A DNA stretch of 64,000 nucleotides from positions 42,904,001-42,968,000 of the forward strand of contig NC_043007.1 in the NCBI RefSeq assembly GCF_006345805.1, read 5' to 3'. Each line of letters opens with the position of its first letter. The first letter of the stretch is position 1. Position numbers and translations under genes: made by a program. The notes beneath the pieces are model-generated. The model was not told where the DNA came from and searched no databases. It was given only the letters and a program-made list of their open reading frames with translations. The stretch is from Octopus sinensis (taxonomy: Eukaryota). Positions 9,898-51,609 of the stretch are shown piece after piece.

Positions 9898-10335
9898 CAC
9901 GTACAGGGACGCTGTCAGTAACGTGAAGGTTGGCAATGAGTACAATGAAAAATTCTGTGTAGAAGTAGGGGTCCACCAAGGATCAGCCCTCAGCTCCCTC
10001 TTATTCATCATAGTCCTCCAGCCAATAACAGAAGAATTCAAGACAGGTTGCCCCTGGGAACTCCTCTATGCTGATGACCTGGCCTTCAGAGCAGAATCAC
10101 TACCAGAACTAGAAAAGAAATTTCAGGTGTGGAAGCAAGGTTTAGAATCGAAGGGCCTTAGAGTCAATGTTGCAAAGACCAAAGTTCTAGTAAGTAGGAA
10201 GGCAAACACTTCAGGTAGGTAGCCCTGCTTAATCTGTAGAAAAGGTGTAGGTAGAAACTCCATCAGATGTACCCAGTGTAAGCTATGGACACATAAGAGG
10301 TGCAGCAACACCAAAGGAAGATTAACTGGGAAGAT
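9898..10335 (+). mobile_element. RTE LINE RT fragment
   Basis: GVHQGSALSSLLFIIVLQ..WELLYADDL..GLRVNVAKTKVL. Confidence 0.92.
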
Positions 10336-12524: not shown

Positions 12525-13532
12525 CGCAATGAGGAGGGAACCAGGCTGCTGGAGTTCTGCGATGCAAATGATCTTATGGTTTGCAACACTAACTTCAGGA
12601 AACCTACCAGTCACCTACCGATCAGGCCGACATACCAGCCAAATTGACTACATCCTTGCCAGGAAAAGGGAAAGATGGCTGCTTATAAATGCCAAAACCT
12701 TCCCAGGCGAAGAATGTACCCCACAACATAGACTGGTAGTTAGTGACTTTAGGATCAGGACTAAGAGGACGACCAATATGGAGAAGAAGGATCTGGAAGT
12801 TTAAAGATCCTGTGAATGGATAGAGATTTAGGGACATATTACTTGAAGCCTTTGATGAAGTAGAAGGGGATAGAGCTTCACATGGGGTAGAAGACAACTG
12901 GACGTTTCTAAGGGACAACCTGCTGAGAGCCACTGACCAGATCTGTGGCTGGTGCAAAGTCCCCTCTCGACCCAAAATAACGTGGTGGTGGAACAATGTT
13001 GTAGACAGGGCTATTAGAGAAAAGAGACAGGCTTGGAAGGACTGGAAGAATGATGGTAGCAGGGAATTGTATCAGACTGCCAAAAGAGAAGCTAGGAGAC
13101 AGGTCTATTTAACCAGAGGGGAAGCAGATAAAAAAAATGTGCCAATGTTCTGTGCCATGAGGACCAAAGACTTGAGGTATTTCGTGTTGCAAGACACTGT
13201 GTAAGAGAGAATCGTGATGTGGTAAGAAAGAAATGTGTTCGCATGGATGATGGTTCACTTGCGCCAAATGAGGATGCAAAGAGAGAGGTTTGGAGACACC
13301 ACTATGAAAGGTTGCTGAATAAAGAAAATGAATGGGATAAAGAGAGTCTGCCGAATGTCAACCCAACAGAGGGACCAGCTATCCGAGTTGACAGTTCCTT
13401 GGTAGTTAAGGCAATTAGAAGCATGAAGACAGGGAAAGCCCCAGGTCCATTAGGAATCACTGCAGAGATGCTCAAAATATCTGGTAGTGTCAGCTATAGC
13501 CTAGTCACCCATATAGTTAATCAGGTGATACA
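12525..13532 (+). mobile_element. RTE LINE fragment (APE C-terminus and linker)
   Basis: TYRSGRHTSQIDYIL..PGEECTPQHRLVV and EVWRHHYERLLNKENEW..MKTGKAPGP; frameshifts and stops. Confidence 0.92.
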
Positions 13533-22020: not shown

Positions 22021-24433
22021 CACAGATTTTAACCTGCACTGTTATATTATTCTAGACCAGCTAGATTAATTGTTATTTCTACAATGGGGACAAAAATCTT
22101 GATTTTCGTACTTCTTTTTATTCCACTTTTTGCATCAACCTTCTTCTTGTCCTTCCCATTTTTTCCTCATATTTTCTCACAGACCAGCGTCCTGGTTTTC
22201 ACTAGGTTTCATGGTATGCACTGACTCCAAAAGATTGCTTGGAGACACATGATGTGTTATAAAATATGCCAAATTCTTGTATCTCTACAACATGAAACTA
22301 TTAGTAGCCTTTTTTTGTGTGTGTATTAAATGACACACACACACACAAGGTAGTTGGTATTAGGAAGAGCATCCAGTCATAAAAATCATGGTGCAGTTTT
22401 CTGGCTTGCCAGCTGCTGTCAAACCATCCAACCAATGCCATCATGGAAAACAAACATTGAATGATGATGATGATGACTCATATATATGTGATTACAAATC
22501 CCATAGCATGCTACCTTAGGCAAATGCCTTCTACTCTTTTACTTTAGTCTTGAGGTGATCAATATCATGTGAATAAAATATGGTAGATGGGAACTGTGTA
22601 GAATCCCATTGCATGTGTGTGTGAGAGAGAGAGTTATTTTTGAACTGGTCTAAAAAAGTGTTGTTGCTTATATTGTTATATTTATGACCTATAACTTAGA
22701 GACTCTATCAATAAGGTTTAGTAAAATACATAGCAGACAAAACATTATTTACTAAATGCTTGAATGCAGTGCTCTACTGTGGCTGCAATCCAATGACTGA
22801 AACCAGTAAAAGAATAAATGAATATAACAATATTTTGTGTCAAAATAATGCTCACACTTTATTCTATTCATGCAACAAAATTCTTTTCAGTTATACAATG
22901 TGTTTTTGTATGCTCTTTGACTTGCAGTAAGATATTGGCATTTAATGTAGATGTTGATGGATAAAACAAAACAACATATGATTCACAGAAGCCAAGTTTT
23001 ACATTATGTTGTTCACTGCTTTACAGGGAGCAACATAATGTAAAATATTGATACCTATGGTTAAGTAACTCTGGTTTTATTGATCTAAGAGCAGAGGAAT
23101 GCAAAGTCAACTACTGCAGGACTTGAATATGCACTTATGTTGCACTGGATCAGATATTCTAATATATTTAGGCCATATTATTGGAGCCTAAAATATCGAT
23201 TTCTTTTGTTTAAGCACGATTAATTAATTTTTTTTTTATTAGGAACAGAGAAATGATAACAATGATGTCATTTTTAGAATCTTTCAAGCAACCATTGAAA
23301 GGATTAAACACTTACCAAATGGTTTCTTATCAAAGTAATGTCCTTTAAACTATTGGGGTGTTGAATATTTATGAAAACTTCATCACCATGCTGTGATTCT
23401 TGGGAGAGCCCTGACAGACAAACTAGGAACAATAATTTATGAGCCATGGGTGAGTTTGAGCTCAGGGCTGGAAGCTGAATAAACATCTGTTGATAATACA
23501 GGAACTTGCTACACATAACAGTAGACTGTACCACTTTGATAAAGAATTCTGCCCAAAATGTTTGACTTAACTGCTTCACAACATAGCTTATTCCATTTTT
23601 TGAGTGTTTTGTATTATTACATGGTGACTATTTATCTCTAAGCAGACTAATTCATTGAGAGTTAAGAGCAGCACTGGTAATGGGACATAGGCCTTTGATT
23701 CATTGGTGTGTAGGCTGGCATATGTTCACCTGTCATTTGTTTCTATGGCGATATCTCCATTATTTTAACATCCATTTTTCATGTTTGCACTGGTCAGAGA
23801 AGTGTATGCTGGAGCAGTTGCCTTTCCTGTCATCAGCCACATCTATTTCCAAGCAAGGTATCAATTCTCCAGTCTATCAAACAATGAACAGCCTAGATAT
23901 AGTTATGCAGTGGAAACAAACAGCACCATTTGAACAAGAATTTTGTTTACAAAGATTGCACAGCATGTCAAAAAGCCTGGATATGCCCCTTGTGGTTGAC
24001 TGCAAGCAAAGAATACTGCTTGTATGGTTGTTTATTGTCAACAAACACACATGTAAAGATGAAGAGAAACATGAACTCACTCACAGAAATACGCAATTTC
24101 ACATAAACACATACATAGATATATGATAGGCTTCTCCAGTTTTTGTTAATTTCACTCACAAGGTATGGGGTGACCCGCAGCAATAGCATAGAATGCCAGC
24201 AAATGATTTACTTGCAGCAGGATTGAACCCCTAATCATGTGCTTTTGAAGTGAACTTCTTAACCACACAGCTATGTCTGGCTTTTAATTATGCTAAGTGA
24301 AAGTTGTTGGGTAGGGAAGAGTCTAAGGTAAATTTATGACACTTTCCAATGTCAGTATTACAGTTACTGGCTTAAAGCATATAACTGAATATTTGTTATT
24401 TATTTTCATTATTGTCATTTATTTTCTTTGCAG

Positions 24434-24529
24434 CTCGACTTCCCAAGTTCACGTCTAGTAATGGTGATGACGAACAATAAAGAAAAATACCATTGTATTC
24501 TACCAGAAGAAAGGCTTATTGAAAATAGT
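24434..24529 (+). CDS. ERLEC1: ERLEC1 exon 2
   Basis: ttttctttgcag acceptor; LDFPSSRLVMVMTNNKEKYHCILPEERLIENS resembles MTTAHKEKYKCILP; donor GTCTGT gives the phase 0 needed by exon 3. Confidence 0.85.
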
Positions 24530-27041: not shown

Positions 27042-27122
27042 ATTTCCGAAAAAGACCAAATGCTGGAATCATCAGAAGAACTCATGCAGAAAATGTTCGA
27101 TAAAAAAATATGTTCATATCGG
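27042..27122 (+). CDS. ERLEC1: ERLEC1 exon 3
   Basis: tttttctcag acceptor; ISEKDQMLESSEELMQKMFDKKICSYR resembles ELLEPLFKQSSCSYR; donor GTAATT. Confidence 0.88.
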
Positions 27123-27394
27123 GTAATTATACCATGATTTTTCATATTATAAGGCTGTGGTGTGAGAAAATATATTTTCTGTGATGCAAAAAAAAAAAAA
27201 TGCAGTTTGACATTCTTTTTGTGAAGTCCTTTGTAAATGAGTATGATATTCACTTGATAGTGAATTACTGGGGACCATAAGTTTAAGATGTCATGGACTG
27301 TTGCACACTTCCCAACATATATAGCAAGGTTTAAGCCCAATGATGATGATGATGCTAATAATAATAATAATAATAATAATTTCAAATTTTGTTA

Positions 27395-28367: not shown

Positions 28368-28445
28368 ATTGAAAGTTTCTGGACATATGAACTTTGTCAT
28401 GGGAAATACATGAGGCAATATCACGAAAGCAAAGATTTAGGCAAG
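28368..28445 (+). CDS. ERLEC1: ERLEC1 exon 4 (MRH1 start)
   Basis: [26 protein letters not shown], classic MRH motif; ttcatag / GTAAGT. Confidence 0.95.
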
Positions 28446-28508
28446 GTAAGTGAAAATTTTTGCATCAGAAATTTTTCTATCTCATCTATGGCTTATGGTT
28501 ACAGTGTG

Positions 28509-28697
28509 TGTTGCAATCGCATGTCAGACTGTTATAACGTCCACTCCAGTATAGCAGTACAGTTAGTTAGACAATTAAGATACGACTCTCTATGACTGAC
28601 TACCCTGACTGCTCAATGTCACAGTATTTGTAATGACTAGCACATACCACTCATCACGTGGCGGGAGTATTTCATTATTACTATCATCCCCATAACA
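28509..28697 (-). repeat. 3' LTR (189 bp); PPT at 28698-28708
   Basis: homologous to 34722-34903; preceded on - strand by AAAAGGGGAGA. Confidence 0.9.
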
Positions 28698-28741
28698 TCT
28701 CCCCTTTTAAGTTTTCTTTTTCTTTTTTAGAGAGTGTAATT

Positions 28742-29077
28742 TTATTTATTTCTATTAGCAATAATTTTTACATCATCCCACCTTACATTGTGTATATTGG
28801 GAATATAAATTTGATAGTAATTTACTAATCCCAGGAATGCTTGTAGCATAGTTACATTATTCAGTGTGGGCATATTTTTTATTGCAGTTGCTCTGAATGG
28901 ATCTGGTTTCCGTCTGTTTTTATCTATTATCTGGCCCAAGTAATTAATTTTTTTCAGGAAGAACTCATATTTTTCTTCACTTAACTTAAAACTGTATTCT
29001 CTTATCTTTTCAAATACCCTCTTTATGTGTTCTACATGTTTGTGTGATTCACTTTTTATTAGGATATCATCTAAATA
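28742..29077 (-). pseudogene. C-terminal RT remnant starting at YLDD
   Basis: YLDDILIKS..IKRVFEKIREYSFKL..LGQIID..LQAFLGLVNYY. Confidence 0.9.
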
Positions 29078-32000
29078 CCATAAAAATCCATGTAATTTGT
29101 ACACCCGTGTAATTTACGCAGGTGATTTTCAGGATAAAATTTGTGAAAAAAAGCTTCTACTTATGTAAAATTTGTGCCCAAAAGTTTTCAGAATTGCCGA
29201 TATAGCCAGGGGTAAAAGGTTTTCAGTTTAGTTGTACTTAGCATAATTTCACTTATGATTAGATTTTCTTAAATTTTCATTAAATAAAGATAATTTCTAT
29301 TTAATAGGTATCACATTGAAAGCTATTAAATTACAAAATGTTTGTGTTGCTTATAATAAACTTTATTTTACATTTCTTGCCCACAAGAGATTATGTCCGA
29401 TCTTTAGCATACTGCTGTATGTCTTCTCAAATCACGATCACAGGAAAAGTTCTTGATAAGAATTACTAACAAAAACAAATAAATATGCACAGGTGTTGCA
29501 AATTAAGTTTAATACCAATAAACATCAGCTTGGATGACACTTTACTCAACTGACAAAGGAAAGTGACTAGTCAAACTGATTATGTAAACAGAATTCTTTT
29601 CTGCCTATACTTGTTGGAACCTTTGATACAGAGTGTCAAAATCTTAATCACTTTCACACTTATAAAATGTTAAGTAAATTAAAAAATTTGTCATTACCAT
29701 TACTGTCAGTATGGGCAGAACATATGAATTGTTTACTGTGAAGGAGAAATTAAATATGCTGAATATGCATTTGAATGTGACAACAGAGCTGCCAGAAGGT
29801 ATTTTAACGTTAATGAAGCCAATGTTCAAAATTGGTGTAAACAACTTAAAACTGTGTCAAGTAATAAACAGACAAAAATAGAAACATACAATCAAGATTA
29901 TCCATATCATTACATTTTTTCAGTTAGGAATATTCTTATCACTATGTATGTCAATGCTGCTCCGTTGCAATAGGTAGAAACTGCAAGCAATGTAAAATAT
30001 GGCCCGGACCGTATTTAGCAGCATGAACGTCAGACTTCAAAAAGTAGTTAACCATTTAATGGTTTTAATAAATTTATACGGAAAAAGTAAGCATTATACT
30101 GTCCAGCATAAATAAAAGTCAACTTCATTATATTTAAACCATTATTTTTTCTGTAAAAACCTATTCTGACATTAAATGAGTCAACTTCTAGTGCAAATTT
30201 TTATATTTTGTACGTCTATTTTCAACCCCCCCCCCCACCACCAAAAAAAACAAGGCTATCTGATGAACAGGAAGACTGATTTTATGACACCCTCTTGCAA
30301 ACTACCTTGTCAATGAATGACAGAGACCTTATTTTGTGGCTGGTGACTTCAATGAGAATGTTGGGCAACATACAGGGGGCTTCCATGAGAGATGTATTAC
30401 TTGAAGCTTTTGATGAAATAGAGGCGGATAATGTAGAAGACAACTGGAGATTCCTATGGAACAACTTGTTGAGGGCTACTGACCAGACCTGTGTCCCCTC
30501 TCAACCCAAGGTAACAGGGTGGTGGAACAATGTAGTTTACAGGACCATCAAGGAAAAGAAACAGACATGGAAGAACTGGAAGAACAGTGATAGCAGGGAA
30601 CTGTATCAGATTGCCAGAAGGGAAGCTAGGAGACAGGTTTACTTAGCCAGAGGGGAAGCAGATAAGAAAAAATTGACCAATGTTCTGCATCGTGAGGACC
30701 AAAGACTTGAAGTGTTTCATGTTGCAAGGCAGTGTGTGAGAGAGAATCGTAATGTCATAGGAGAGAAATGTGTCTGCATGGATGAAGGCTCACTTGCATT
30801 TAATGAGTCTGAAAAGAGAGAGACTTGGAGAACCCACTATGAAAGGTTGCTAAATGAAGAGAATGAATGGGAGGAAGAGAGTCTCCCAAGTGTCAACCCA
30901 ACAGAGGGACCAGCTATCCGAATTGACAGTACCTTGGTAGATAAAGCAGGAATCACTGCAGAGATGCTTAAAATATCTAGCGGTGCCAGCTATAGTCTAG
31001 TCACCCGTATAGTCAACTAGGTGATACATGAAGGAGTCATACCCAATGACTGGTGTAGCAGCACCATAGTCAACTGCTACAAAGGTAGAGGTGATGCATT
31101 AGATACAAATAATTACAGAGGTATCAAGTTGTTGGATCAGGTAATGAAGGTTACAGAGAGGGTCATAGCCCAACTAATTAGGGAGAGAGTTAGCTTAAAT
31201 GAGATGCAGTTTGGTTTCGTGCCAGGAAAAAGCACTACTGATGCTATATTTCTGGTAAGTCAGCTGCAGGAGAAATACCTAGTCAAAGACTTGGTTTTTG
31301 TTGACATGGAGAAAGCCTTTGACAGAGTTCCCCGATCCCTTATCTGGTAGTCAATGTGGAAACTAGGGATAGATGAGCAATTAGTAAGCGCTGTACAAGC
31401 CATATACAGGGATGCTGTCAGTAAGGTGAAGTTTGGTAATGAGTATAGTGAAGAATTCTGGGTTGGGGTAGGGGACCACCAAGGATTAGTCCTCAGACCC
31501 CTCTTATTCATCATGGTCCTCCAGGCAATAACAGAAGAATTTAAGACAGCATGCTCCTGGGAGCTTTTCTATGCTGATGATCTTGCTCTAATAGCTGAGT
31601 CACTATCAGAACTAGAGGATAATTTTCAAGTGTAGAAGCAAGGTCTAGAATCGAAGGGCCTTAGAGCCAATCTAACAAAAACCAAAGTTTTAGTAAATAG
31701 GAAGGCAGACAAATTGCCAATCCCTGCTCGATCTGTAGAAAAGGTAGAAACTCCATAAGATGTACCTAGTGTAAGCTATGGGCACATAAGAGGTGCAGCA
31801 ATATCAGAGGAAGGTTAACAGGGAAGATAGTTTTTGTGTGTGGGCAACAGACACTGAAAATATGTGTGGGCAATAAACACTGAAAATGTGGAGAAAACAG
31901 CTTCCATCACATGCTAGGGGGAAAAACTAGAAGTAATTGATAGCTTCTGTTACCTAGGTGACCAAATCAATAGCAGGGATGGATGCCCTGAGAGTGTTTC

Positions 32001-33123
32001 TGTTAGAAAAAGAATAGCTTGGACAAAGTTCAGAGAGCTCCTACCTCTGCTGGTAACAAATGGCCTCTTGCTGAGAGTGAAAGGTAGATTGTATGATGCA
32101 TGTGTGTGAACAGCCATGCTACATGGCAGTGAAACATGGGCTGTGACTGCTGAGGACATGTGTAAGTTTGCAAGAAATGAAGCTAGTATGCTCCACTGGA
32201 TGTGTAATGTCAGTGTGCATACACGACAGTGTAAGTGCCCTGAGAGAAAAGTTGGACATAAGGAGCATCAGATGTGGTGTGCAAGAGAGACGACTGTGCT
32301 GATATGTCATGTGTTGTGTATGGATGAGGACAGTTGTGTGAAAAGTGTCACATCCTAGCAGTAGCAGTAGAGATAACCTGTGGAAGATCCAGGAAGACCT
32401 GGGATGAAGTGGTGAAGCATGACCTTTGGATGTTGGGCCACACAAATGCAATGACAAGTGACCAAGACCTTTCGAGATATGCTGTACTTGAGAAGACCCA
32501 GCAAGCCAAGTGAGACCGTAACTGTGGCCTTATCCAGTGTAGCATAACCGTGTAGTACCTCTCAATCATTGGGCAATGAACTGTGCTTGAGTAGACCTAT
32601 TGAGTAAAGTGAAATCATTGTCATTGCTGATGCCAGTACTTTCTGACTGGCACCCATGCCAGTGGCATGTATAAAGCACCATTCAAGTATATTTGTTGCC
32701 AGTACCCACTGACTGGCATCCGTGCTAGTGGCATGTAAAAGGTACCATTCAAGCATGGTTGTTACTAGTGCTGCCTGACTAGCTCCCGTGCCGGTGACAC
32801 GTAAAGAGTACCATTCAAGTGTGGTCAGTGCCAGTACCACCTGACTGGCCCTTGTGCTGGTGACACATAAAGAACACTCACTACACTCTAGGAGTGGTTG
32901 GTGTTAGGAAGGGCATCCAGCTCTAGAAACCTTGCCAGATCATTTTGGAGCCTGGTGCAGCCTTCTGGCTTGCCAGCCCTCAGTCAAACTGTCCAACCCA
33001 TGCCAGCATGGAAGGTGGACGTTAAACATTGATGATGATGATCTACTCATGTAATTTATGCACCCACTAAAGTTTATTTTTATTTTTGTGGTAAAAATGT
33101 GTAAATTGCATTTGTTTTTACAG
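29078..33123 (+). mobile_element. pogo/Tigger-like DNA transposon remnant nested in the LTR element
   Basis: TA|ccataaaaatccatgtaattt and aaattgcatttgtttttacag|TA degenerate TIRs with TA TSD; 29711-29850 encodes AEYAFECDNRAARRYFNVNEANVQNWCKQ, Brinker-type HTH of pogo transposases. Confidence 0.8.
30250..33042 (+). mobile_element. RTE LINE copy (about 2.8 kb, decayed) nested in the pogo element
   Basis: APE remnant, linker, NYRGIKLL, QFGF-PGKSTTDAIF, FVDMEKAFDRVPR, FYADDL, 3' tail with (GAT)n. Confidence 0.95.
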
Positions 33124-33610
33124 TAGGTGATAGTAAAATTACTGTCCGCCAGCACTGTATCCATTACTTGTTGAAATATGGAAGAGGCCTCTTCTACACC
33201 GAAGGGAAGCTGCTTAAATTTAAATAAGCCAATTAATGGCTAATAAGTGTGAGCATTCCTCTACTTGGATTTGTAAATATGCATCCAAGAGGTCTAATTT
33301 TGAGAAGAATTTCTCTCCATTCAATTTTGCAAACACTTCCTCAAGACTTGGCAATTGTAGTTATGTGAGATGAACTGAATTTTTTAACACATACTTTTGC
33401 TGTTTTCATTTGGTCACGAAATGTCACATCACACACAAATTCAACTACAAAATGCAATCTTTTACCTGTAACACCATGTGCTACTTTTGTATATTTATTT
33501 AATTTTGGCTTATCGATATGCTTCACTTCCAAGTTTCTTCATTCACAATGGTAATATCACTTCCATTGTATAACTACATCTTTACTCTTATATTTTCAAT
33601 TTTCACATTT
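33124..33610 (-). pseudogene. protease and N-terminal RT remnant of the LTR element
   Basis: LYNGSDITIVNEETW (degenerate LDTGSD), FSKLDLLDAYLQI, LPFGV..SSIFQQVMDTVLA..FTITY. Confidence 0.85.
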
Positions 33611-33689
33611 ATTAATTTCCTCTTTGTAACATTACCATTTTCTTTCAACAACATCTTGTTTATTCTTTTCTCTTTGTTCCAACATTTTG

Positions 33690-34611
33690 TCATCTTAGTT
33701 TTACAGCGCACTTTTGCATGTCCAATTTTTCCACAACAGAAACATTCCACTTTCTTAAATGGGTTTTTTTTTCTCAGGTGTAGACCTCCACGTGCACAAC
33801 ATGGGTTTGTTTCCTGATTTTTGTCCTGTTTGTATTGTATTGTATTTTAAGTACACACTTGATTCCTATTCTGCCTGTTTCACACTTGTTTCACTTAGGA
33901 ACAATTATTATGTTCAATTTTCTCTGCATCATTTTTTAATTTTCCAATTCTTTCACACTCTTCTGACACTTGTTGTAAGGTTACAGCTTGGTTTTGTTCC
34001 AGCTTAGTGAGAATTCTTGTTCTTACTTCTGTATCTTTTTCTATAGTTACTCCCTGAGTAAATATCAGGCACTTGAACATATCTGATTTTAATTCATCCA
34101 GTTTGAATTTTTCACATTCTCTGTTAACTCTGCCAGCATATATGATGTAGTCCTCATTGTTCTTTTCCAGGTTCAAATATTTCCAGTGTGTATTGAACAA
34201 CGAGCTTTTCTTGCTAAAATTTTTACACAATATGTCTATTGTATTTTTAAAGTTTATGTCAGAAGGTTTTTTTGGGAGTACATAATTGCTGCAATGCTCA
34301 TGTTCTCCTGCCACTTTTCTTAGGATTAGATGCATTTTCATATCATCGTCCCAGTCTTTGCTCTCTTTATTAAAGATCTGTTTGTATCTTCTATAGTATG
34401 CCTCAAAGGTAACTCCTTCATCTGGTTTATACTTAAATTCTGTTATTGTGTTTACAACATAATCTGGTGAGAACATCTTTTCAGCATTTTTGGATGACTT
34501 ACTATTCATTAATTGTAACGTTCTTTGCTGTAGTAGTAATTGTTGCTGTTGTTCTTTCAGTTGTTGTTGCTGTTTTTGCAACTGGAGCAAACCAGCCAAC
34601 AATTCTTCCAT
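33690..34611 (-). pseudogene. gag remnant with tandem zinc knuckles
   Basis: 238-aa ORF (F-Y-P-EG-TF--YYRRY..SLFN..W..LNL..CLIF-QG) then, in another frame, C--RGGLH and CFCCGKIGHAKVRC. Confidence 0.88.
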
Positions 34612-34721
34612 AATTTTACAATTTTGTATACCATAAAATTTTCACAAAAAACTTTAGTGAGTTTCGTAACTCCTTGTGAATTTGTTTATTCCTACTGAGT
34701 TTGCTAATTCCTCATCACCAC

Positions 34722-34903
34722 TGTTGTAATCTCACATCAGACTGTTATAATGTCCACTCTGGTATAGCAATGTAGTTAAACAAGTAAGATACAACCATCT
34801 ATGACCAACTACCCCGACTGCTCAATGTCACAGTATTTGTGACTATCACATACCACTCATCACATGGGAGAGATGTTCCATTATTACTATTATCCCCATA
34901 ACA
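34722..34903 (-). repeat. 5' LTR (182 bp); PBS at 34710-34720
   Basis: TGT..ACA ends; followed on - strand by TGGTGATGAGG. Confidence 0.9.
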
Positions 34904-36535
34904 GTATGTGTCGAGCAGAAGTCATTTGGGCTGCTCTTAAACATATCTGTATTCACACTACAAAAACTCATAATGCTGATACTCAACTCCAGTTTTTGCA
35001 GTATTACGCAAACTCTTTACCTGGTCAAATCTGTTGACAGTAGCTTTTCTTGTGGCAGGAGTTGAATTCAGCAGTGTAAGTGAATGAAATGTTGTGTTAT
35101 TGCTATAGCTTACAATTGATAACTATATCATCTGTGATACTTACTTATAGTTTGGTGAGCCAACCAGGGAGCTTCTTCACAGTCATTTGATATGCTACAA
35201 AATAGCAACCAAATTTCCTTTAAATTGCTCTTTCTCATTTTAGATAATCTATGTCTGAATAAAAGATTGAGGTGAGGTAATGGCTGAAATGTTTTTGCTC
35301 ATAGTTCAGGGCTATACTAGGTTCAACAGCAAATCTTTATTATTCACCTCTGAAAATTTTAAATGTTCATAGATACAATGCAACACCAGTGTCATGACTG
35401 AACTGCTAATGTCTTGGCACCCTGATGAGTCAAAAGTTTTTCAATGAGTCACTCACCAACCTAAAAATACATCAAAAGTGTATGCTCTGAGTTCAAATAT
35501 CAACTAGGTCAACTTTGTTTCTTCTTCCAAGGTTGATAAAATAAATACCACATGTTCCGGGGTTGATATAATCAACTAAAACCTTTAAGGTGGTACCCCT
35601 ATGTAGTCACAATACAATCACTGAAACAAGTGAATGAATAAAAGAATTTATTCTATATATGGAATGTGTTACACATAAATCTTAAAATAGTGAAAACTCT
35701 TTCATTGACTTCTTATCATGGCTTTACAATTTTTGATAGTTTTAAAATTATTTATTTTGCACTCCAATCTTATAAATCTCCTTGTACACATGCATCCACG
35801 TACATGCATGTACACTTGCACACACACACACACACATGTGCATGTGCACACTATAAGTTCTTGGCTGTTGAAAGAGCAAGACAGCAACTGTATGTAACTG
35901 AAAAGTCATGAGACATATTTTTGAGTGGAAGAGCTCAGTGTCTCCTTCACATCTGATTGTGCTTCTTGTGTGGGAAGGTCTAAGAATTCCAAGGTGGAGC
36001 CTTTCATCTTCTGATTAACTAATAATGTAATAATGCCTTTCACACTGCAAGTTTTCTGTTGTGTCTCTTAACTGGACACTTAATTCCATATGCTTCAGTG
36101 TACCAAACCTTCAGGAAACCTTTTCATCAGAACACTAGTAACTTAACCAAGGGCAAAATTGTCTCTCATGATTTGTAACCTGTTGTACATAATAACTCTA
36201 TGAAACCTCTTAGTCTTTTATAAAAGGTTGTATAAACATTGTCATTATCATGGTAAAACAGGCTTCAAGCTAATAAAAGATCCTTTGAATTCTAATGTAC
36301 CTACTTAAAATTGGAGGAATGTTTTGAATAAAGTAATCCTGAATATAAATTAAAATTGTTTATTTGGAACTGGTCCTGGGCCTCACAACTGTTAGACTTT
36401 ACTAAAAAAATTAAGTTCTATTACTTTTTATGAATTTTTATATATTTGATCTAAAGGTTCAAGTTATAACCATTGATGACCGATTCACCACTTTGTTAAT
36501 TCAATGTTTTTTTTTCCAATTCCTTGTTTTTACAG

Positions 36536-36599: not shown

Positions 36600-37669
36600 G
36601 TAAGTCAGGCTGCTTTTTTTTTCTTTCTTTTTCTTTTCTTTTTAAAATTCATATTTTGTTTCTTTGTGGTTAAAAATTCAATTCACAAACGTGTGGTTCT
36701 GGGGTTCAGTCCCACTGCATAAAAGATTACATAAGTGTCTTCTACAATAGCCCCTGACCAACCATTGACTTGTGAGTGATGGAAACTATATGGAAGCCTG
36801 TCATATATGTGTGTGTATTATGTGAATGGTTACAGTCTTAGATACCTTCACATGAAATTGTTCAAGTAAAAGCCATGAGAGTATGTTGACAATTCCGTCA
36901 ACAAATCACCCACCCTATTGCTCAGTGTTTTCAAAGACAAATTAAAATCTACTAGAAAAACTGGAATGGGTTAGTGACACTCAGCTACTGTAAAACATTG
37001 CCTCAGTAATGTATTTGTCCCAGCTTATGCTAGCATGGAATAACCGTTAAACGAATTGATAAACAAACAAAATGAACTCGGTTCCATTGTGGTTGTTTAG
37101 CCCCTAGTCAACCACGAACAAGCAAACTTTTGATCAAAAGCCTTCCAGCTGGATATATTATATATATTTCAGATATAATATATTCAGAACTATATGATCT
37201 ATGGCTTTAATTTTTTTTAAATGTTATAATGTGATTTGGGGGAGATTTAGCTACTATATCTAACAAGTCAAGTAACCTCATTGGCTCACTTTTGTAATTG
37301 CCTTTGTCATCATTTTTATCAACCATTGTCATTATTATTATTATTATTGTACCTGTCGTGATTATTATCACCACTACCATCATCATCATCATCATCATCA
37401 TGTTCATTATATTGGCTTTAATTTATAGTATCACTAAATCATTGTTTTTGTTATTATCATCATTATCATTTTTTGTTATTTTTTTATTATTGTTACCAAT
37501 ATCATGTTGACTCCTCCTCATTAGTATCATTAATATCACCATTCTATCATTGGTATCACCATTCCTTCAACCTTAAGCATCATTATCAACTTTTGTCACT
37601 ATTATCACCACCATTCACTACACAAATATACCTCCTTTGTGATCATCCCATTTCATCATCATTATCATC

Positions 37670-38170
37670 GTTTAGCGTCCGCTTTCTATGCTAGCATGGG
37701 TTGGACGGTTCAACTGGGGTCTGGGAAGCCAGAAAGCTGCACCAGGCCCAGTCTGATTTGGCAATGTTTCTACGGCTGGATGCCCTTCCTAATGCCAACC
37801 ACTCCATGAGTGTGGTGAGTGCTTTTTACATGCCACTGGTACAGGTGCCAGATGAGGCTGGCAAACGGCCACGATCGGATGGTGCTTTTTAAATGCTACT
37901 GGCACAGGGGCCAGGCAAGGCTGGCACCGGCCACGATCAGATGGTGCTTTTTACATGCCACCAGCACGAGGCCAGTCGGGGCGGCGCTGGCAACGGCCAC
38001 GTTCGGATGGTTCTCTTACGTACCACCGGCACTGGTATCACAGCTGCAATTTCCATTGATGTTGATCGATTTCGATTTTCACTTGCCCCAACAGGTCTTC
38101 ACAAATAGAGTTTTGTGTCCCAAGAAGGAAAGGTATGCATAAGTGGACTGGCTACATCCCATGTAAAGGC
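37670..38170 (-). mobile_element. RTE 3' tail with tandem subrepeats
   Basis: reverse complement of tail at 1-576 and 32460-33040. Confidence 0.88.
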
Positions 38171-40240: not shown

Positions 40241-40887
40241 TGCTTTGTGAGGCCACCCTGACACCTTATGCTATTATTTATCTCTTACAACTCCTACTGA
40301 TCGTTTCTTCTTTCTCTTTCTTCCCCTCCCCTAATAGATGTGAGTTGCCCTACAGAAGCCTTTACAGGAACCTACTCTATCCCCAACCTTTCGTAGTATT
40401 CCCCTTGTCCCCTAGCATGATACTGATCCTCCTACCTCTCCCAGGGTCCTTAGTCCTGTGAGTTGCATGACAATCCCAATAGTGCAGGTGGCACAAAAAA
40501 CACCCAGTCTATGCTGTAAAGTGGTAGGCATTAGGAAGGGTATCCAACTGTAGAAGCCATGCCAAAGCTGACATTGAAGCTTGATTTAACCCTGGGACTC
40601 ATCAGATCCTATCAATCCATCCAACCCATGCCAGCTTGGAACATGGATGTTAAATGATAATGATGAATGGTGAATTCCCCAAACAGTCAGAGAAGGTTAA
40701 ATGTAAATGTAATTGAGAATTTCAGTAAAAACTGTCTCCCACTTTTAATCATTGATCAAAGTAATTATTTAAACAAAGATGATTGATATAACAGTCTTTA
40801 CAAGCTAATTTGATAATCTCATTTCTAACATGTCAGTGTCCATTGAATAAGTTGTTAACCAGATTCTCTGATTTTTTTTATTCGCAG

Positions 40888-42282: not shown

Positions 42283-42501
42283 GTACACACACGAAAAGTT
42301 GATGGTCTTGACTTACCTTACTTCCAAGTAAACATAACTGATGGTACAGTTTGTGACCTGACTGGAGGACCAAGACAGGCAGCTATTCTTTATGTGTGCC
42401 AACCAGAAGGCCGAGGGGAAATCTTTGAAATGAAAGAAGTATCCACATGTGAATATGAAATTATTGTGCTCACATCAGTTCTCTGTAGCCACCCAGATTT
42501 T

Positions 42502-42503
<2 letters not shown>
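42283..42503 (+). CDS. ERLEC1: ERLEC1 exon 7 (MRH1 C-terminal half)
   Basis: VHTRKVDGLDLPYFQVNITDGTVCDLTGGPRQAAILYVCQPEGRGEIFEMKEVSTCEYEIIVLTSVLCSHPDF; cattctag / GTAAGT, phase 2. Confidence 0.96.
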
Positions 42504-42535
<32 letters not shown>

Positions 42536-44119: not shown

Positions 44120-44370
44120 CTATACTGCACTCAGTAGAGGAGTTTTATCTTGCAGGTACTTAGTGACCTCACGGGTACTGGGACCACATAAAAAGCACCC
44201 AGTACACTCTGTTAAGTAGTTGACTGTAGGAAAGCCGTCCATTTGAAGAAACCATACCAAAGCAGATGTAAAACCTGGTGTAGCCCTCTGGCTCATCTGT
44301 TCTTGTTGAACTGTCCAACCCATGCCAGCATGGAAGAGGGAACATTAAATGATGATGATGATGATGATGA
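44120..44370 (+). mobile_element. SINE/RTE-tail copy
   Basis: aaaaagcaccc..ccaacccatgccagcatggaa..(GAT)n; similar copies at 22350-22475, 40480-40645, 47040-47400. Confidence 0.75.
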
Positions 44371-46598: not shown

Positions 46599-47830
46599 GT
46601 ATGTAAAACATTTAATTCTTTACAATGCTTCAAATATATTCACATTTCTGATCACAGCTCTTGTCTTGGCAAACTGACTTTAATATAAACAAGATTCAGA
46701 AGAAAGTTAATGGATTGTTTTAAGCTGTGCCTTACCAAAAATCTTTACTCTTTGGGTTATTACAATACTATGTCTTCTCCAATTCATTTGTTATACTATT
46801 TCATCAATGCAGTTTTATACTAATCTCTTCAAATTTGAGTCATTATTAGAAATAGGCACCAGATCATAAATCAAGTGTTTGCTCTATCTTACTACTCTGC
46901 ACTATCTTCAGTACATTCTGACAAGTTATTTCTCATTATAATTATCTCCAATACAATGCTTATCATTGTCATATTCATCACTATCTCTGTCAACATCGTT
47001 AGGATCATTATTATCATCAATATCCCGTTCTGGTGGCCCATAAAAAGCACCTTTCAAGTGTTGGGCTTCACAGAGGCTATGTAGCTGATGCTGGTGTCAT
47101 GTAACTAGAACCTATGTAAAAAGCACCTTCTGAACACCAGGCCTCACAGAGGCAATGACAAATGATATGCTTGAGAAGAAGACCCATCAAGCTAAGTGAA
47201 ATCATAGTTGTGGCAGATACTGGTCTTATGCCAACTGACATCCATTACACTCATGGAGTGGTTGGTGTTAGGAAGGACATCCACCTGTAAAAACAATGCC
47301 AAATCAAACTAGAGTCTGGTGCAGTACCTCAGCTTACTAGCCCTGGTCAAACTGTCCAACCCATGCCAGCATGGAGAAGGGATATTAAATGATGATGATG
47401 AATAGTCTAATGTTCCGCTTTTGATTTGTCCATTGTCATTGGATGTTCAAGTCCAAACCAGTTGACTAGTCTCCCTCTCACAGTATTTATTTTTTACCAA
47501 AGCTTAACTGTTTTGATACCAGCCTACCCTCAGGGACCACCTGTGGTTCTATGAAACAAAACTACCTATATTAAAATTATCATATTTAAATTAAAATCTT
47601 CCTCCATAATTTTATGTGAACTCCTTTAGCTAAGTTGATTTCCAAACACCATTTTAATAAAATGTCTCTTTAAATTTTTTTCATTCTTTTCATAATTAAT
47701 AATTAAAATATAAGTACAAAAGGGTTTAGTATAGATTTTTTTATCAACTGGTCTATCTATTTGTCCTAAAGTAGAAATACATTAGATGTTTCGCTATACT
47801 TCATCTGAAACTATTCTCATTATTTCACAG

Positions 47831-47890
47831 GGTGCTGGATGGTGGAAACATGAATTTTGTTATGGCAAATATGTTCGGCAATATCATGAC
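47831..47890 (+). CDS. ERLEC1: ERLEC1 exon 10 (MRH2 start)
   Basis: GAGWWKHEFCYGKYVRQYHD; tttcacag / GTAAGT. Confidence 0.96.
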
Positions 47891-48728: not shown

Positions 48729-50013
48729 GCTTCTCAAGCTGCACTGTAGTAGTCAAGGTGTGTTGTGTGGAATATATATATATTACTTTCACAGTACACA
48801 ACACAACATTCTGTGACTTACATAATAGCCAATTTACTGCTAACTTCTCAAGCATAATCAAGGCAAAACCAGTGGCATAGAATGGGGTGTGTAAGCCACA
48901 CAGGGTCTCCATTTTATAAATGTGTTTACTATGATGAAAAGTATGTTGCATTTAAGTGAGGGGGTGGCCAATATGGCTACTATACAGGGTGATCAAAACT
49001 TGTGCTATGCCACTGGCATGATCTGTTTTAAAGCAAAGTAGAGCTATATTACTTATACAAAGTTATAAGCAATGGTTTTGCAAGATTTGTTCTCATGATA
49101 GTAGTGTTCTGGTTTGATTTATTTGGCTGGATAAAGAATATACTCAATGCTGACATAACAGTATTCACCCAAAGCAAAACAAGCTAGTAGTATATATCAC
49201 TGGATTTCTCAACTTGAAATAATATATGTGTATATTTGTGTATATATTATTATTATTTTACATATAGCAAGCACTGATGATCAGTTCCTTCATCAGCTGT
49301 TGACTGGCAGTCACAATAATTTCAATATTTATCTAAACAAACAGTGATTTATGAGTGCTAAAGAGTACCTCATTTACTGTTAAAGAAGCCAATATATTTC
49401 AAGAAAACTTCAGCCTTGGTTATGATTAAATTCTCCGGAGAGCTTAGTCTCAGAGTAGTGTTCAGTCTTTTGTTTTTGATAGTAAAGTGATAAACAAGAT
49501 GTAGGAACAGCAGTAGTAGATGTACCTACTGCCCTTCATCTATACATGCTCTCATCTTGTAATTTAATATTGCTACTATTTGTTATTCACAGAGTACTGA
49601 TAACTGACAACTATATGAGAAGTTAAAGATTCATATCCTTTACTTCCACTGAATTATGTCTTTGACCTAAGAAATTTAATTCTTTGAAGGTGAAATCTAC
49701 TTTTCTCTGAGTTTTAAAAAGTACAGTAGACTGTTGCAGACAGCAACTGCATTGTAAAATTGCAAAAATTGTTTGGTACCATGTTGTGGTTGGTTCACTT
49801 CCTCTTAGAGGGAAGAATATGAGTCCTATTCAGGAGCACATTTATCTCTGATTTGTTTAATGCTGTAGAAAAGCATGATATACACCAATTCAGTGTATTA
49901 TTAAGATGAGAGAAAGGATTATCTAATTGTTTCTGATATTCATTGCTGTTTCTTTTCTCTGCTTTATTCAGTTTCTTTATCACAGGAGTGTTTCTTCTCT
50001 CTTCTATTCATAG

Positions 50014-50091
50014 GAGTATTTCCCTACTCTATACTGACGGAGACTTCTGTGAAGCCAATGGAAAGAAGAGAATTGTTGAAGTTAAATTAAA
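50014..50091 (+). CDS. ERLEC1: ERLEC1 exon 12
   Basis: SISLLYTDGDFCEANGKKRIVEVKL resembles [24 protein letters not shown]; attcatag / GTAAGT. Confidence 0.93.
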
Positions 50092-50199
50092 GTAAGTTAT
50101 TTTTCAAAATATATCAATGATACAGCTTCATAAAACTTTTTTTTTTGCCAAGGACGTTTTCTATTTTTTATCAAGCATTGTTATTCATTTGAAATTGAG

Positions 50200-50650
50200 A
50201 TTAGAGAGGATATACCAAGCATGGAAGCAAAAACCTAGTATCAAGAGGTCTTAAGGTAAATTTAGCAAAGACAAAAGTTTTAGTAAGTGGGAAAGAAGAC
50301 AGGACTCTGGTGTCTTAGGGGAAACGATCTTGCTCAATATGCAGATAAGGATTCCATACACTGAGCCCAATGTAAGCTATGAATACACAAGGGATGCAGC
50401 AAAATCCCAGGCAAACTAAGAGAAAACATAAGCTTCATATATGATAAATGCACTGGAGCAAACCAGAAATAGATTCTCTTAAATGCCCAGATGGCTCATT
50501 AGAAGTAGCTGATAGCTTTAGTTAACAAGGAGACATGATTGGCTAGGGAAGTGGCTGCTCTGAAAGCATAGTAGCCAGAATAAGAATGGGTTGGAGAAAG
50601 TCCATGGAGCCACTGCCTCTTGGTGACAAAAGTCTTTTCCCTCAGTGTGA
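50200..50650 (+). mobile_element. old RTE fragment (post-RT region)
   Basis: WKQNLVSRGLKVNLAKTKVLVS.. with many stops. Confidence 0.7.
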
Positions 50651-50960
50651 GTAGTAGTCTTAATCTGTCACTTTGTTTAACACCATAATTTGGCTATTTA
50701 ATTCTTTTAATACAGTCTACTCTGTTCTAATCATTTAGATTAGGTTTGAAGATATTCATCCATTTCTGCTACTAGTCTCAGGGGTAAAAAGGTCATGGGC
50801 AGTTCTTCTGACTAAACCCTGAAAACAACAATAAAAATATGATTTTGCTTCACTATTATTTCATGTGCTTTTTTAAAAATTATCTCTCTAATATGCCTGT
50901 CATGTAAGACACACTGGCAGTTACATCATCAAAGTTCTACATTTTTACTATTTTACTCAG

Positions 50961-51039
50961 GTGCATTGAAGATTTAAGCAGATCACATTCTTTTGCATTA
51001 TACATCATGGAACCCAAAACTTGCGAATACATTTTAAAT
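50961..51039 (+). CDS. ERLEC1: ERLEC1 exon 13
   Basis: CIEDLSRSHSFALYIMEPKTCEYILN; ttttactcag / GTAAGT. Confidence 0.94.
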
Positions 51040-51609
51040 GTAAGTAAATTAATCTGTTTCCAATGTGTACCTGCTATTCATTTATAAAGATAATAAGTGG
51101 GACATTTTGCAACAATTAACATTCACTGTGTCCCTATATTAACACACAGTTAACATAGGGAGACAGAATTTGATAACAGTGACATTTTGTTGTAGTTATT
51201 GTTCTTTAGCCCTAGACCACCTCTTGTCAACCAGAACTATGAACAAAAACATTCCATCATGCTATTTATGATATTCCCATCTTTGTTATGGTTTTCCCCC
51301 AGATATATTATAATCCAACATGTCCCCCAGATATAACATTATCTAACATATTAAAACAATATGTTGTAATTTGGTTGCTATTTTTTGCATGTTGAGCACT
51401 AATATTGAAGATACCTCATTGGCTTGTGAAATATTTTGTTATAGAACATGGTGGTCGACAAGAAAATAAAGATAAATATGTAATGCAAATGACTTGATAA
51501 ATTTAATTTTTGGCAGGATTTTATATTTTAACAGAAAAATTAATAAAGACTGACAAAATACAGATGGAGGAAAGTTAGGTTTTTTTCCTCTGCACTATTC
51601 CTATACTTG

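What the first reader, a model, noticed from the sequence alone, without database searches (positions are those of the whole stretch)
28509..34903. Three-layer transposon nest in which a pogo element landed in the TA of the YLDD catalytic tyrosine
Seen: on the - strand the LTR element's RT reads QVMDTVLADSNFTIT-TA up to 33124, and resumes TA-T-TTA-GAT-GAT (YLDD) at 29077. Removing 29078-33123 plus one TA restores ...FTITYLDDILIK in frame. The intervening DNA has degenerate TIRs (ccataaaaa / tttttacag, consistent with opposite-strand CpG decay of ccgtaaaaa) and a Brinker-type HTH remnant, and itself contains a 2.8-kb RTE. This gives a relative chronology LTR, then pogo, then RTE, beginning only 63 bp past the ERLEC1 exon 4 donor.
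Basis: seen in the sequence. Interest (0 to 1): 0.7.

Follow-up and report, generated by a model that had tools for sequence, protein, structure and literature searches.

The report
Ordinary three-layer transposon nest in intron
Inside an intron of an ERLEC1-like gene, probably in an octopus genome, a decayed LTR retrotransposon was split exactly at the tyrosine codon of its YLDD motif by a pogo-like DNA transposon that itself carries a truncated LINE, which is a clean but ordinary example of nested junk DNA.

Summary
A 6.4-kb LTR element lies on the minus strand (LTRs 28509-28697 and 34722-34903). Its reverse transcriptase stops at ...FTIT-TA (33124) and resumes at TAT-TTA-GAT-GAT (29077). 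Octopus proteins of the same family map consecutive residues across the break, and the rejoined piece aligns without a gap to Ty3 RT.

The 4,046-bp insert has TA on both sides and an anchored terminal inverted repeat of 18/26. An independent copy (73% identical) loses homology exactly at TA|CCAT. The insert's only coding remnant is a Brinker-type helix-turn-helix, typical of the Passer family of pogo. Neither copy has a DDE domain, so "pogo-like" is probable, not proven.

Inside the insert lies a 5'-truncated non-LTR retrotransposon of about 2.85 kb with a (GAT)n tail. The RTE clade was not tested.

Corrections:
- Both host elements are deleted derivatives. The LTR element lacks RNase H and integrase. 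The DNA transposon is about 1.2 kb.
- The CpG-decay account of the TIR mismatch gains no support.
- The Tyr of YLDD is not the catalytic residue.
- The order pogo then LINE is likely but not proven.

Biologically it is ordinary.

The parts
28368..28445 (+). ERLEC1-like exon ([26 protein letters not shown]); the donor GT is at 28446-28447, 63 bp before the LTR
   Evidence: The tblastn E-value is 1.4e-8 with a human ERLEC1 sequence recalled from memory, so the gene name is a lead. The exon number was not verified.
28504..28508 (.). Target-site duplication of the LTR element, left copy (GTGTG)
   Evidence: matches GTATG at 34904-34908 in 4 of 5 positions
28509..28697 (-). 3' LTR of the element (TG...CA)
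   Evidence: 85% identity to 34722-34903, K2P 0.171
28698..28728 (-). Polypurine tract next to the 3' LTR (AAAAAAGAAAAAGAAAACTTAAAAGGGGAGA on the - strand)
   Evidence: Read directly
28745..29077 (-). C-terminal half of the RT (YLDD through the LQAFLGLVNYY thumb segment); 29076-29077 is one copy of the TA duplication
   Evidence: (RVT_1 profile 152-205, 1.7e-8)
29078..30195 (+). Left part of the pogo-like DNA transposon; the right edge is approximate (30190-30225)
   Evidence: 73% identity to the independent copy L001 from 29076 to 29843, with homology starting at TA|CCAT
29078..29103 (+). Left terminal inverted repeat (CCATAAAAATCCATGTAATTTGTACA)
29712..29871 (+). Remnant of the transposase N-terminus: ATG at 29712, one frameshift, Brinker-type HTH at 29749-29844
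   Evidence: P0005 is 85% identical over 27 aa. BrkDBD scores 21.1 bits, below the Pfam cutoff.
30196..33043 (+). 5'-truncated non-LTR retrotransposon (RTE-like). Endonuclease remnant FVAGDFNENVG at 30333-30395, RT domain about 31105-31695, 66-bp tandem array at 32631-32849, (GAT)4 tail at 33031-33042
   Evidence: searches (RVT_1 1.2e-24; closest solved RTs are L1 ORF2p and R2), 56, and 10 and 48 (many tail copies in the window)
33044..33123 (+). Right end of the pogo-like element, 80 bp, with the right TIR at 33098-33123 (...GTTTTTACAG)
33124..33354 (-). N-terminal half of the RT (LPSLEEVFAKLNGEKFFSKLDL ... FTIT), with one frameshift near 33230; 33124-33125 is the second copy of the TA duplication
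33443..33579 (-). Protease remnant (M*LYNGSDITIVNEETWK / KHIDKPKLNKYTKVAHGVTGKRLHFVV), with a stop codon and a frameshift
   Evidence: P0021 residues 1-44
33574..33750 (-). CCHC zinc-knuckle region of gag (ECFCCGKIGHAKVRC)
   Evidence: read in the translation
33895..34611 (-). Open 238-aa N-terminal stretch of gag (DUF7083)
   Evidence: (PF23309, 8.9e-15)
34704..34721 (-). Primer-binding-site region next to the 5' LTR (G-TGGTGATGAGGAATTAG on the - strand)
   Evidence: Read directly; the tRNA was not identified
34722..34903 (-). 5' LTR
34904..34908 (.). Target-site duplication of the LTR element, right copy (GTATG)

Best explanation
Three successive transposon insertions lie in the intron after the 28368-28445 exon of an ERLEC1-like gene, probably in an octopod genome.

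Step 1. A Ty3/Gypsy-type LTR retroelement integrated antisense to the gene, 63 bp past the splice donor, and made a 5-bp duplication. The copy is defective, either at insertion or through later deletion. It has gag, a zinc knuckle, a protease remnant and RT. A polypurine tract and the 3' LTR follow directly after the RT thumb, so RNase H and integrase are missing.

Step 2. A cut-and-paste DNA transposon of the IS630-Tc1-mariner group then integrated at a TA dinucleotide and duplicated it. It is most likely pogo superfamily, Passer-like. The TA happened to be the first two bases of the TAT (Tyr) codon of the RT's YLDD motif. This copy keeps about 630 bp of 5' leader, the start of the transposase (Brinker-type HTH) and 80 bp of the 3' end. 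It has no catalytic domain, so it could move only with a transposase supplied in trans.

Step 3. A non-LTR retrotransposon (RTE-like) was copied into that element by target-primed reverse transcription. This left the usual 5'-truncated copy, which starts inside the endonuclease domain and ends in (GAT)n.

All three elements are dead and decaying. No function for the host is implied.

Shown: the boundaries, both duplications, RT colinearity and the family terminus at 29078. Inferred: the superfamily of the DNA transposon, the LINE clade, and that the LINE arrived after the DNA transposon had landed here.
For: LTR element:
- LTR pair with TG...CA ends, K2P 0.171.
- Flanking GTGTG/GTATG, a polypurine tract and a TGG primer-binding site.
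- gag DUF7083 at 8.9e-15 and RVT_1 at 2e-15.
- Ty3 RT match at 2.4e-19.
- The relatives are 'K02A2.6-like' RT fragments of Octopus bimaculoides and O. sinensis.

The break:
- Consecutive residues of the family proteins map to 33126 and 29077.
- The family reads FAIGYLDDILIKSES straight through.

DNA transposon:
- TA on both sides.
- Anchored TIR of 18/26, reached by 162 of 500,000 random pairs.
- The only two TA-flanked CYRTAAAAA sites in the 64 kb are the two termini.
- The independent copy L001 is 73% identical over about 770 bp (an 820-column alignment), and its homology starts at TA|CCAT with an unrelated flank.
- The N-terminal ORF is homologous to P0005 and to proteins built of BrkDBD + HTH_Tnp_Tc5 pairs.
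- BrkDBD + HTH_Tnp_Tc5, a TA duplication and TIRs of 40 bp or less describe the Passer family of pogo (PMC7386202).

LINE:
- RVT_1 at 1.2e-24.
- The closest solved RTs are L1 ORF2p and R2.
- A GDFN endonuclease remnant lies at its 5' edge.
- It has a (GAT)4 tail, and the tail is repeated many times in the window.
Against: - No DDE_1 catalytic domain, and no significant HTH_Tnp_Tc5, is detectable in the window copy. The independent copy gives only a faint Tc5 start, E 0.015.
- The BrkDBD hit stays under Pfam's cutoff.
- The right terminus at 33123 has no second copy to confirm it.
- No target duplication was found for the LINE, and its 5' edge is uncertain by about 30 bp.
- The LINE tail is about 0.126 from a rough 7-copy consensus, against 0.085 for half the LTR-LTR distance. 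Divergence therefore does not corroborate that the LINE is the youngest layer, although the difference is within error.
Confidence: 0.85

Rival explanations
1. The parts are the same but the history differs. The LINE inserted into the DNA transposon at another locus, and the 4-kb composite, still bearing both TIRs, was then mobilised in trans and landed in the RT as one unit. The order would be LTR element, then arrival of a transposon that already contained the LINE. The LINE insertion could even predate the LTR insertion.
For: Both TIRs and the TA duplication are intact around the whole 4,046-bp block. The LINE tail's distance to a rough consensus (0.126) is not smaller than half the LTR-LTR distance (0.085). 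No LINE target duplication was found to date the event locally.
Against: Cut-and-paste mobilisation usually becomes less efficient as an element grows, which is general knowledge about Tc1/mariner elements. No second composite copy is known. The independent copy L001 has no LINE where the window copy does. The divergence difference is within sampling error, and the consensus mixes subfamilies.
Confidence: 0.1
2. The middle element belongs to another TA-duplicating lineage of the IS630-Tc1-mariner group (Tc1, mariner or similar) rather than pogo, or it is a non-autonomous element that merely captured an HTH-coding fragment.
For: No catalytic domain survives to classify it. The BrkDBD score is below the Pfam cutoff. 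None of the database proteins that share the HTH has a DDE_1 domain either.
Against: The HTH sits right after an ATG that is conserved in the independent copy (MGRTY...), where a transposase N-terminus would be. Its homologues pair BrkDBD with HTH_Tnp_Tc5, an architecture reported for pogo/Passer and POGK and not for Tc1 or mariner (PMC7386202). L001 continues into a faint Tc5-type start.
Confidence: 0.1
3. The apparent nest is a coincidence or a rearrangement. The two RT halves would come from different LTR-element copies brought together by deletion or recombination, and the 'TIRs' would be chance AT-rich similarity.
For: The TIR is short and AT-rich, with 8 mismatches in 26. A TA dinucleotide is common in DNA of 35% GC.
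Against: The two halves abut to the exact nucleotide once one TA is removed. Family proteins map consecutive residues across the break. The two LTRs flank the whole with a matching 5-bp duplication. An independent copy ends at the same base as the left terminus.
Confidence: 0.02

Closest known systems
Passer family of the pogo superfamily (IS630-Tc1-mariner), the source of vertebrate POGK (Gao et al. 2020, PMC7386202)
   Same: TA target duplication, short TIRs of 40 bp or less, and an N-terminal Brinker-type HTH whose homologues pair it with HTH_Tnp_Tc5.
   Different: No DDE_1 catalytic domain and no significant Tc5 HTH remain. The copy is about 1.2 kb and non-autonomous. The terminal bases are CCAT and CTGT, so the TIR is imperfect at positions 2-3. 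Family placement by phylogeny is impossible from this remnant.
Ty3/Gypsy (Metaviridae) LTR retrotransposons; nearest annotated relatives are octopus 'uncharacterized protein K02A2.6-like' fragments
   Same: TG...CA LTRs, a 5-bp duplication, a primer-binding site and polypurine tract, gag-CCHC-protease-RT order, and an RT with YLDD that aligns to Ty3 RT.
   Different: RNase H and integrase are absent, because the polypurine tract follows the RT thumb directly. The RT N-terminus carries a deletion of about 30 aa plus frameshifts. Without the insert the element is only about 2.35 kb.
RTE-clade LINEs of octopus, such as RTE-2_OV (Petrosino et al. 2022, PMC9115989)
   Same: A non-LTR RT preceded by an AP-endonuclease-type remnant (GDFN), 5' truncation, no poly(A) and a short tandem-repeat tail. 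RTE families are abundant in octopus genomes.
   Different: The clade was not established here. Octopus genomes also hold CR1, L1-Tx1 and Dong-R4 LINEs. This copy is dead, with many stops and frameshifts, and it has a 66-bp tandem array in its 3' UTR.
Nested transposon insertions in general, such as the layered LTR nests of maize intergenic DNA and TE-in-TE dating used in many genomes (general knowledge)
   Same: Younger elements interrupt older ones, and the topology gives a relative chronology.
   Different: Nothing differs in principle. The only special feature is that the break falls in a recognisable catalytic motif, so the empty site can be read at the protein level.

Membership tests
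Ty3/Gypsy LTR retrotransposon | Two direct LTRs ending TG...CA, flanked by a 4-6 bp target duplication | tested here: met
   LTRs at 28509-28697 and 34722-34903, 85% identical. Flanks are GTGTG and GTATG, matching 4 of 5.
Ty3/Gypsy LTR retrotransposon | Primer-binding site after the 5' LTR and a polypurine tract before the 3' LTR | tested here: met
   The polypurine tract at 28698-28728 and TGGTGATGAGG one base after the 5' LTR were read directly. The priming tRNA was not identified.
Ty3/Gypsy LTR retrotransposon | RT of the Ty3/Gypsy type with a YXDD box, downstream of gag and protease | tested here: met
   RVT_1 at 2e-15; Ty3 RT 4ol8 at 2.4e-19; gag DUF7083; protease and RT mapped with octopus family proteins.
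Ty3/Gypsy LTR retrotransposon | RNase H and integrase downstream of the RT (the order RT-RH-IN separates Gypsy from Copia) | tested here: not met
   Homology ends at about 28781, the stop codon is at 28742-28744, and the polypurine tract starts at 28728. There is no room for RH or IN. This copy is a deleted derivative, so its placement rests on RT similarity alone.
Mag clade of Ty3/Gypsy | Phylogenetic placement of the RT among reference Gypsy clades | not tested
The 'K02A2.6-like' names are automatic annotation, not a clade test.
pogo superfamily (IS630-Tc1-mariner) | TA target-site duplication | tested here: met
   TA at 29076-29077 and at 33124-33125. Removing one copy restores the RT frame. 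The independent copy is also TA-flanked at its left end.
pogo superfamily (IS630-Tc1-mariner) | Short terminal inverted repeats | tested here: met
   18 of 26 anchored matches, reached by 162 of 500,000 random pairs.
pogo superfamily (IS630-Tc1-mariner) | N-terminal DNA-binding domain of the CENP-B_N/BrkDBD/psq type followed by HTH_Tnp_Tc5 | tested here: inconclusive
   BrkDBD scores 21.1 bits against a cutoff of 23.4. HMMER homologues are BrkDBD + Tc5 proteins. The Tc5 HTH is not detectable in the window and is faint in L001 (E 0.015).
pogo superfamily (IS630-Tc1-mariner) | DDE_1 catalytic domain with the DDxD triad | tested here: not met
   No hit in any of the six frames of 29078-30320 or in L001. 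The region is deleted or replaced, so membership cannot be proven from this copy.
pogo superfamily (IS630-Tc1-mariner) | The termini are those of a dispersed family | tested here: met
   Met for the left terminus only. L001:261-1028 matches window 29076-29843 at 73% identity, with unrelated flanks. L001 to L010 are one locus, so this counts as a single extra copy. The right terminus was not seen elsewhere.
RTE-clade LINE | Non-LTR reverse transcriptase | tested here: met
   RVT_1 at 1.2e-24. The closest solved structures are L1 ORF2p and R2.
RTE-clade LINE | AP-type endonuclease N-terminal to the RT | tested here: inconclusive
   A GDFN-containing remnant at 30333-30395 is seen by eye. There is no Pfam hit because only the C-terminal end of the domain is left.
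RTE-clade LINE | 3' end without poly(A), finishing in short tandem repeats | tested here: met
   The element ends in (GAT)4 at 33031-33042. The same tail closes at least seven other copies in the window.
RTE-clade LINE | Phylogenetic placement of the RT in the RTE clade rather than CR1, L2 or L1-Tx1 | not tested
   No named references were reachable. The C-terminal GRSRKTWDEVVKHDL motif resembles RTE/BovB as recalled from memory, which is a lead only.

The most novel reading that the evidence does not exclude
The LTR layer may be more than random wreckage. It could belong to a non-autonomous gag-protease-RT family that lacks RNase H and integrase and spreads in trans in octopods. Alternatively, its 238-aa open gag stretch (DUF7083) may have been kept open by selection, as happened for Arc-like domesticated Gypsy gag genes. 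At the age implied by the LTRs, the chance that 238 codons stay free of stops is about 0.09, and the chance that they stay free of frameshifts is about 0.07-0.4.
Probability: 0.04. Interest if true: 0.45.

Novelty: already known. Interest (0 to 1): 0.1.

Why it matters
It matters little beyond annotation. Nested transposons are the normal state of repeat-rich genomes. About two thirds of the Octopus vulgaris genome is repeats (PMC13282606).

The case has three modest uses:
- It is a worked example in which an empty site can be read at the protein level.
- It gives a relative-age anchor (LTR K2P 0.17) for one pogo-like family and one LINE family.
- It shows that a splice donor tolerates 6.4 kb of nested repeats starting 63 bp away.

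It opens no new question.

Tried and rejected
Steps that led nowhere:
1. A word-indexed homologue search with the decayed transposase remnant found nothing. The exhaustive HMMER search was needed.
2. I looked for an orthologous empty site. The ERLEC1-like query returned only two short Logan fragments. The one contig fetched covers a different exon. Look-ups work by exact sequence and cannot reach orthologues, so filled or empty sites in related species could not be examined.
3. The window's gag ORF is not on record, and the run accession of the related contigs appears in no paper. The source species therefore stays inferred.
4. The Tc5-type HTH and the DDE domain of the DNA transposon were not found in six frames of the window copy, nor in the three forward frames downstream of the HTH in L001.
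5. No exact match of 6 bp or more for a LINE target duplication was found. The LINE's 5' edge could not be fixed, because no other copy in the window keeps the endonuclease part.
6. Dating by divergence gave LINE tail to rough consensus 0.126, against LTR/2 of 0.085. This is uninformative within error.
7. The internal CTGTAAAAAC at 30151 looked like a stray TIR. The 10-mer occurs six times in the window and the similarity does not extend, so I rejected it as chance.

Rejected idea: that the break is a rearrangement artefact (refuted).

Full report
**What is there**

The window is AT-rich (35% GC) and strongly CpG-depleted (o/e 0.29). On the + strand it carries exons of an ERLEC1-like gene in colinear order: 24458-24505, 27048-27125, 28368-28445, 42283-42504, 47831-47890, 50012-50092, 50947-51057 and 54030-54098. 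The query for that mapping was the human sequence recalled from memory, so the gene name is a lead and not a database result.

The exon [26 protein letters not shown] ends at 28445 and is followed by GTAAGT. Sixty-three bases later, at 28509, a block of 6,395 bp of nested repeats begins.

**Layer 1: the LTR element (- strand)**

Direct repeats at 28509-28697 and 34722-34903 begin with TG and end with CA. They are 85% identical (27 differences in 182 aligned sites: 22 transitions, 5 transversions, two indels; K2P 0.171). The flanks are GTGTG and GTATG, a 5-bp duplication with one later change. A polypurine tract abuts the 3' LTR, and G-TGGTGATGAGG follows the 5' LTR.

Reading down the - strand, the interior holds:
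- an open 238-aa gag stretch (34611-33895; DUF7083, 8.9e-15);
- a CCHC knuckle;
- a protease remnant with a stop codon and a frameshift;
- an RT.

The nearest relatives are RT fragments annotated 'uncharacterized protein K02A2.6-like' in Octopus bimaculoides and O. sinensis, at 50-70% identity. This is the basis for calling the window octopod.

Homology to those proteins ends near 28781, the stop is at 28742-28744, and the polypurine tract starts at 28728. RNase H and integrase are therefore absent. About 30 residues of the RT N-terminus are also missing relative to P0021. Without the insert the element is only about 2.35 kb, so it is a deleted, non-autonomous copy.

**The break**

The - strand reads ...AATTTTACTATCACC-TA at 33124 and TA-T-TTA-GAT-GAT from 29077. 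I joined only the short flanks.
- Removing 29078-33123 and one TA gives ...NFTITYLDDILIKSESH... Other offsets break the frame.
- The joined 145-aa piece hits RVT_1 in a single stretch (profile 114-205, 2e-15). The halves alone cover 114-140 and 152-205.
- It aligns with no gap at the junction to Ty3 RT (4ol8, 2.4e-19...FVNVYLDDILI...).
- It also aligns to its own family (...FAIGYLDDILIKSES...).

The cleanest evidence needs no joining. In piecewise tblastn, P0011 residues 66-99 map to 33227-33126 and residues 100-199 to 29077-28781. The same holds for P0012, P0015, P0016 and P0021. The insertion therefore removed nothing and added only TA.

One correction of wording: in the YXDD box the two aspartates bind the catalytic metals. 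The tyrosine is not the catalytic residue (established RT biochemistry).

**Layer 2: the TA-flanked DNA transposon (29078-33123, 4,046 bp)**

The ends are CCATAAAAATCCATGTAATTTGTACA and, in reverse complement, CTGTAAAAACAAATGCAATTTACACA. They share 18 of 26 anchored matches, a level reached by 162 of 500,000 random anchored pairs from the window. The pattern TA+CYRTAAAAA occurs only at these two places in the 64 kb. The window holds no second copy.

The only coding trace is on the + strand. An ATG at 29712 (MGRTYELFTVKEKLNM) is followed by one frameshift and then YAFECDNRAARRYFNVNEANVQNWCKQ. Pfam gives BrkDBD at E 0.019 raw and at 2.9e-4 (21.1 bits, cutoff 23.4) after stitching the frameshift.

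An exhaustive HMMER search of 1.84 billion representatives found eight proteins.
- P0005 is a 64-aa ORF (MGRTYSFTVKKKLNTVGYAFEHGNRAARRHFNVNEANIQNWCKQ...). It is 85% identical over the HTH.
- Four hits (P0003, P0004, P0008, P0010) are built of BrkDBD + HTH_Tnp_Tc5 pairs. A fifth, P0009, is an array of CENP-B_N-type HTH domains, and the other two are unrelated.

According to Gao et al. 2020 (PMC7386202), that double DNA-binding domain characterises the Passer family of the pogo superfamily and the derived gene POGK. The same paper gives TA duplications and TIRs of 40 bp or less as typical.

The DNA encoding P0005 was retrieved as ten Logan contigs. They are one locus (99.4-99.9% identical). Its homology to the window runs from L001:261 to 1028, matching 29076-29843 at 73% identity. 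It begins at ...GAATTAC-TA-CCATTAAAAACCATGTAATTTGCA..., and the upstream flank is unrelated.

Limits of the evidence:
- The right terminus has no second witness.
- No DDE_1 domain and no significant Tc5 HTH are found in either copy.
- 'Pogo-like' is therefore probable (about 0.85) but not proven.

The independent copy also carries CCAT at the left end. That idea gains no support, though it is not excluded in this CpG-depleted genome.

Excluding the LINE, the element is about 1.2 kb: about 1,118 bp on the left and 80 bp on the right. It is an internally deleted, non-autonomous copy. Whether the deletion preceded the LINE insertion or accompanied it cannot be told.

**Layer 3: the LINE (+ strand, about 30196-33043)**

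The three forward frames together give the following:
- the end of an AP-endonuclease-like domain (...EQED*FYDTL... FVAGDFNENVG at 30333-30395);
- an RT (RVT_1 1.2e-24, about 31105-31695, with a YADD box);
- the usual post-RT region;
- a C-terminal ...GRSRKTWDEVVKHDL... motif.

Many stops and frameshifts interrupt them. The closest solved RTs are L1 ORF2p and R2, so this is a non-LTR element.

The 3' UTR holds 3.3 copies of a 66-bp unit (32631-32849) and ends in (GAT)4 at 33042. The last 180 bp or so recur at least seven times in the window. No target duplication was found, and the 5' edge is uncertain between about 30190 and 30225.

The RTE label fits the (GAT)n tail, the C-terminal motif as I recall it for RTE/BovB, and the abundance of RTE families in octopus (PMC9115989, PMC13282606). 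Those genomes also carry CR1, L1-Tx1 and Dong-R4 LINEs, and I could not run a clade test.

**Chronology**

LTR element before DNA transposon follows from topology, because the RT is split and exactly restorable. DNA transposon before LINE at this locus is the simplest reading. A composite that already contained the LINE could still have been mobilised through its intact TIRs.

Divergence does not help. The LINE tail lies 0.126 from a rough seven-copy consensus, against 0.085 for half the LTR-LTR distance. Both figures have standard errors of roughly 0.02-0.03, and the consensus mixes subfamilies. I put the composite scenario at about 0.1.

**Comparison and verdict**

Each layer is a member of a well-known kind of element, and nesting of this sort is routine in repeat-rich genomes. 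The arrangement has no indicated function. Its one attraction is didactic: the TA target fell in a codon of a universally recognisable motif. Interest is low.

**Left out on purpose**

See the referred steps.

Noticed in passing
window 33895-34611 (- strand): The N-terminal 238 codons of gag are still open although the LTRs differ by K2P 0.17. Simulation gives about 0.09 for no new stop and about 0.07-0.4 for no frameshift. This is mildly unusual, but it was selected after the fact. The ancestral gag clearly ran on through the CCHC knuckle, which is now in another frame.
   Followed up: partly
window 32631-32849 and 37655-38032: The LINE's 3' UTR carries 3.3 copies of a 66-bp tandem unit. An inverted partial copy of the same LINE tail, about 4.6 kb downstream, carries a related 63-bp array of 3.4 copies. 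The copy number of this minisatellite appears to vary between LINE copies.
   Followed up: partly
window 3-574, 8544-8712, 22389-22476, 40482-40666, 44185-44365, 47243-47401; also 7590-8397, 9895-10335, 12837-13532, 50205-50630, 58344-58801: Many further fragments of the same or related LINE families lie in the window, and most of the tail fragments end in (GAT)n or (ATG)n. The pieces at 7.6-13.5 kb may be one LINE broken up by later insertions, which would be a second nest.
   Followed up: no
window 33048-33061 versus 29089-29102: The subterminal motif CATGTAATTT(G/A)T(A/G)C of the DNA transposon's left end recurs in direct, not inverted, orientation immediately after the LINE tail. The longer stretch matches in about 17 of 20 positions by eye. 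It may be a second transposase-binding repeat, or a sign that the right-end fragment has a more complex history.
   Followed up: partly
L001 about 1090-1300: Downstream of its HTH, the independent copy of the DNA transposon first reads like the start of a Tc5-type HTH (PELETELYHWICDKRDEGFGVS). It then shows strings that look hAT-like to me (ACATDGALTMIG, VHCRIHKQHL). Pfam finds nothing significant. The copy may be chimeric or nested.
   Followed up: partly
proteins P0003 (2,283 aa) and P0004 (679 aa): These proteins of unknown origin consist of up to nine tandem BrkDBD + HTH_Tnp_Tc5 pairs with no DDE domain. They could be arrays of pogo-type DNA-binding modules, domesticated genes, or gene-model artefacts over clustered transposon remnants.
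   Followed up: no
whole window: CpG observed/expected is 0.29 at 35% GC. LTR differences are 22 transitions to 5 transversions, and 4 of them are CpG to TpG or CpA changes. This is consistent with methylation-driven decay of these repeats.
   Followed up: partly
window 31837-31887: A 26-bp tandem duplication (2 copies, 92% match) lies inside the LINE coding region, downstream of the RT domain.
   Followed up: no
The protein collection holds octopus RT fragments from NCBI and EukProt. It nevertheless returned no octopus ERLEC1 for a 162-aa query made of this window's exons, and the best hit was a Logan fragment at 64% identity. Either the gene is missing from those proteomes or the window comes from a lineage less close to Octopus than the repeats suggest.
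   Followed up: no
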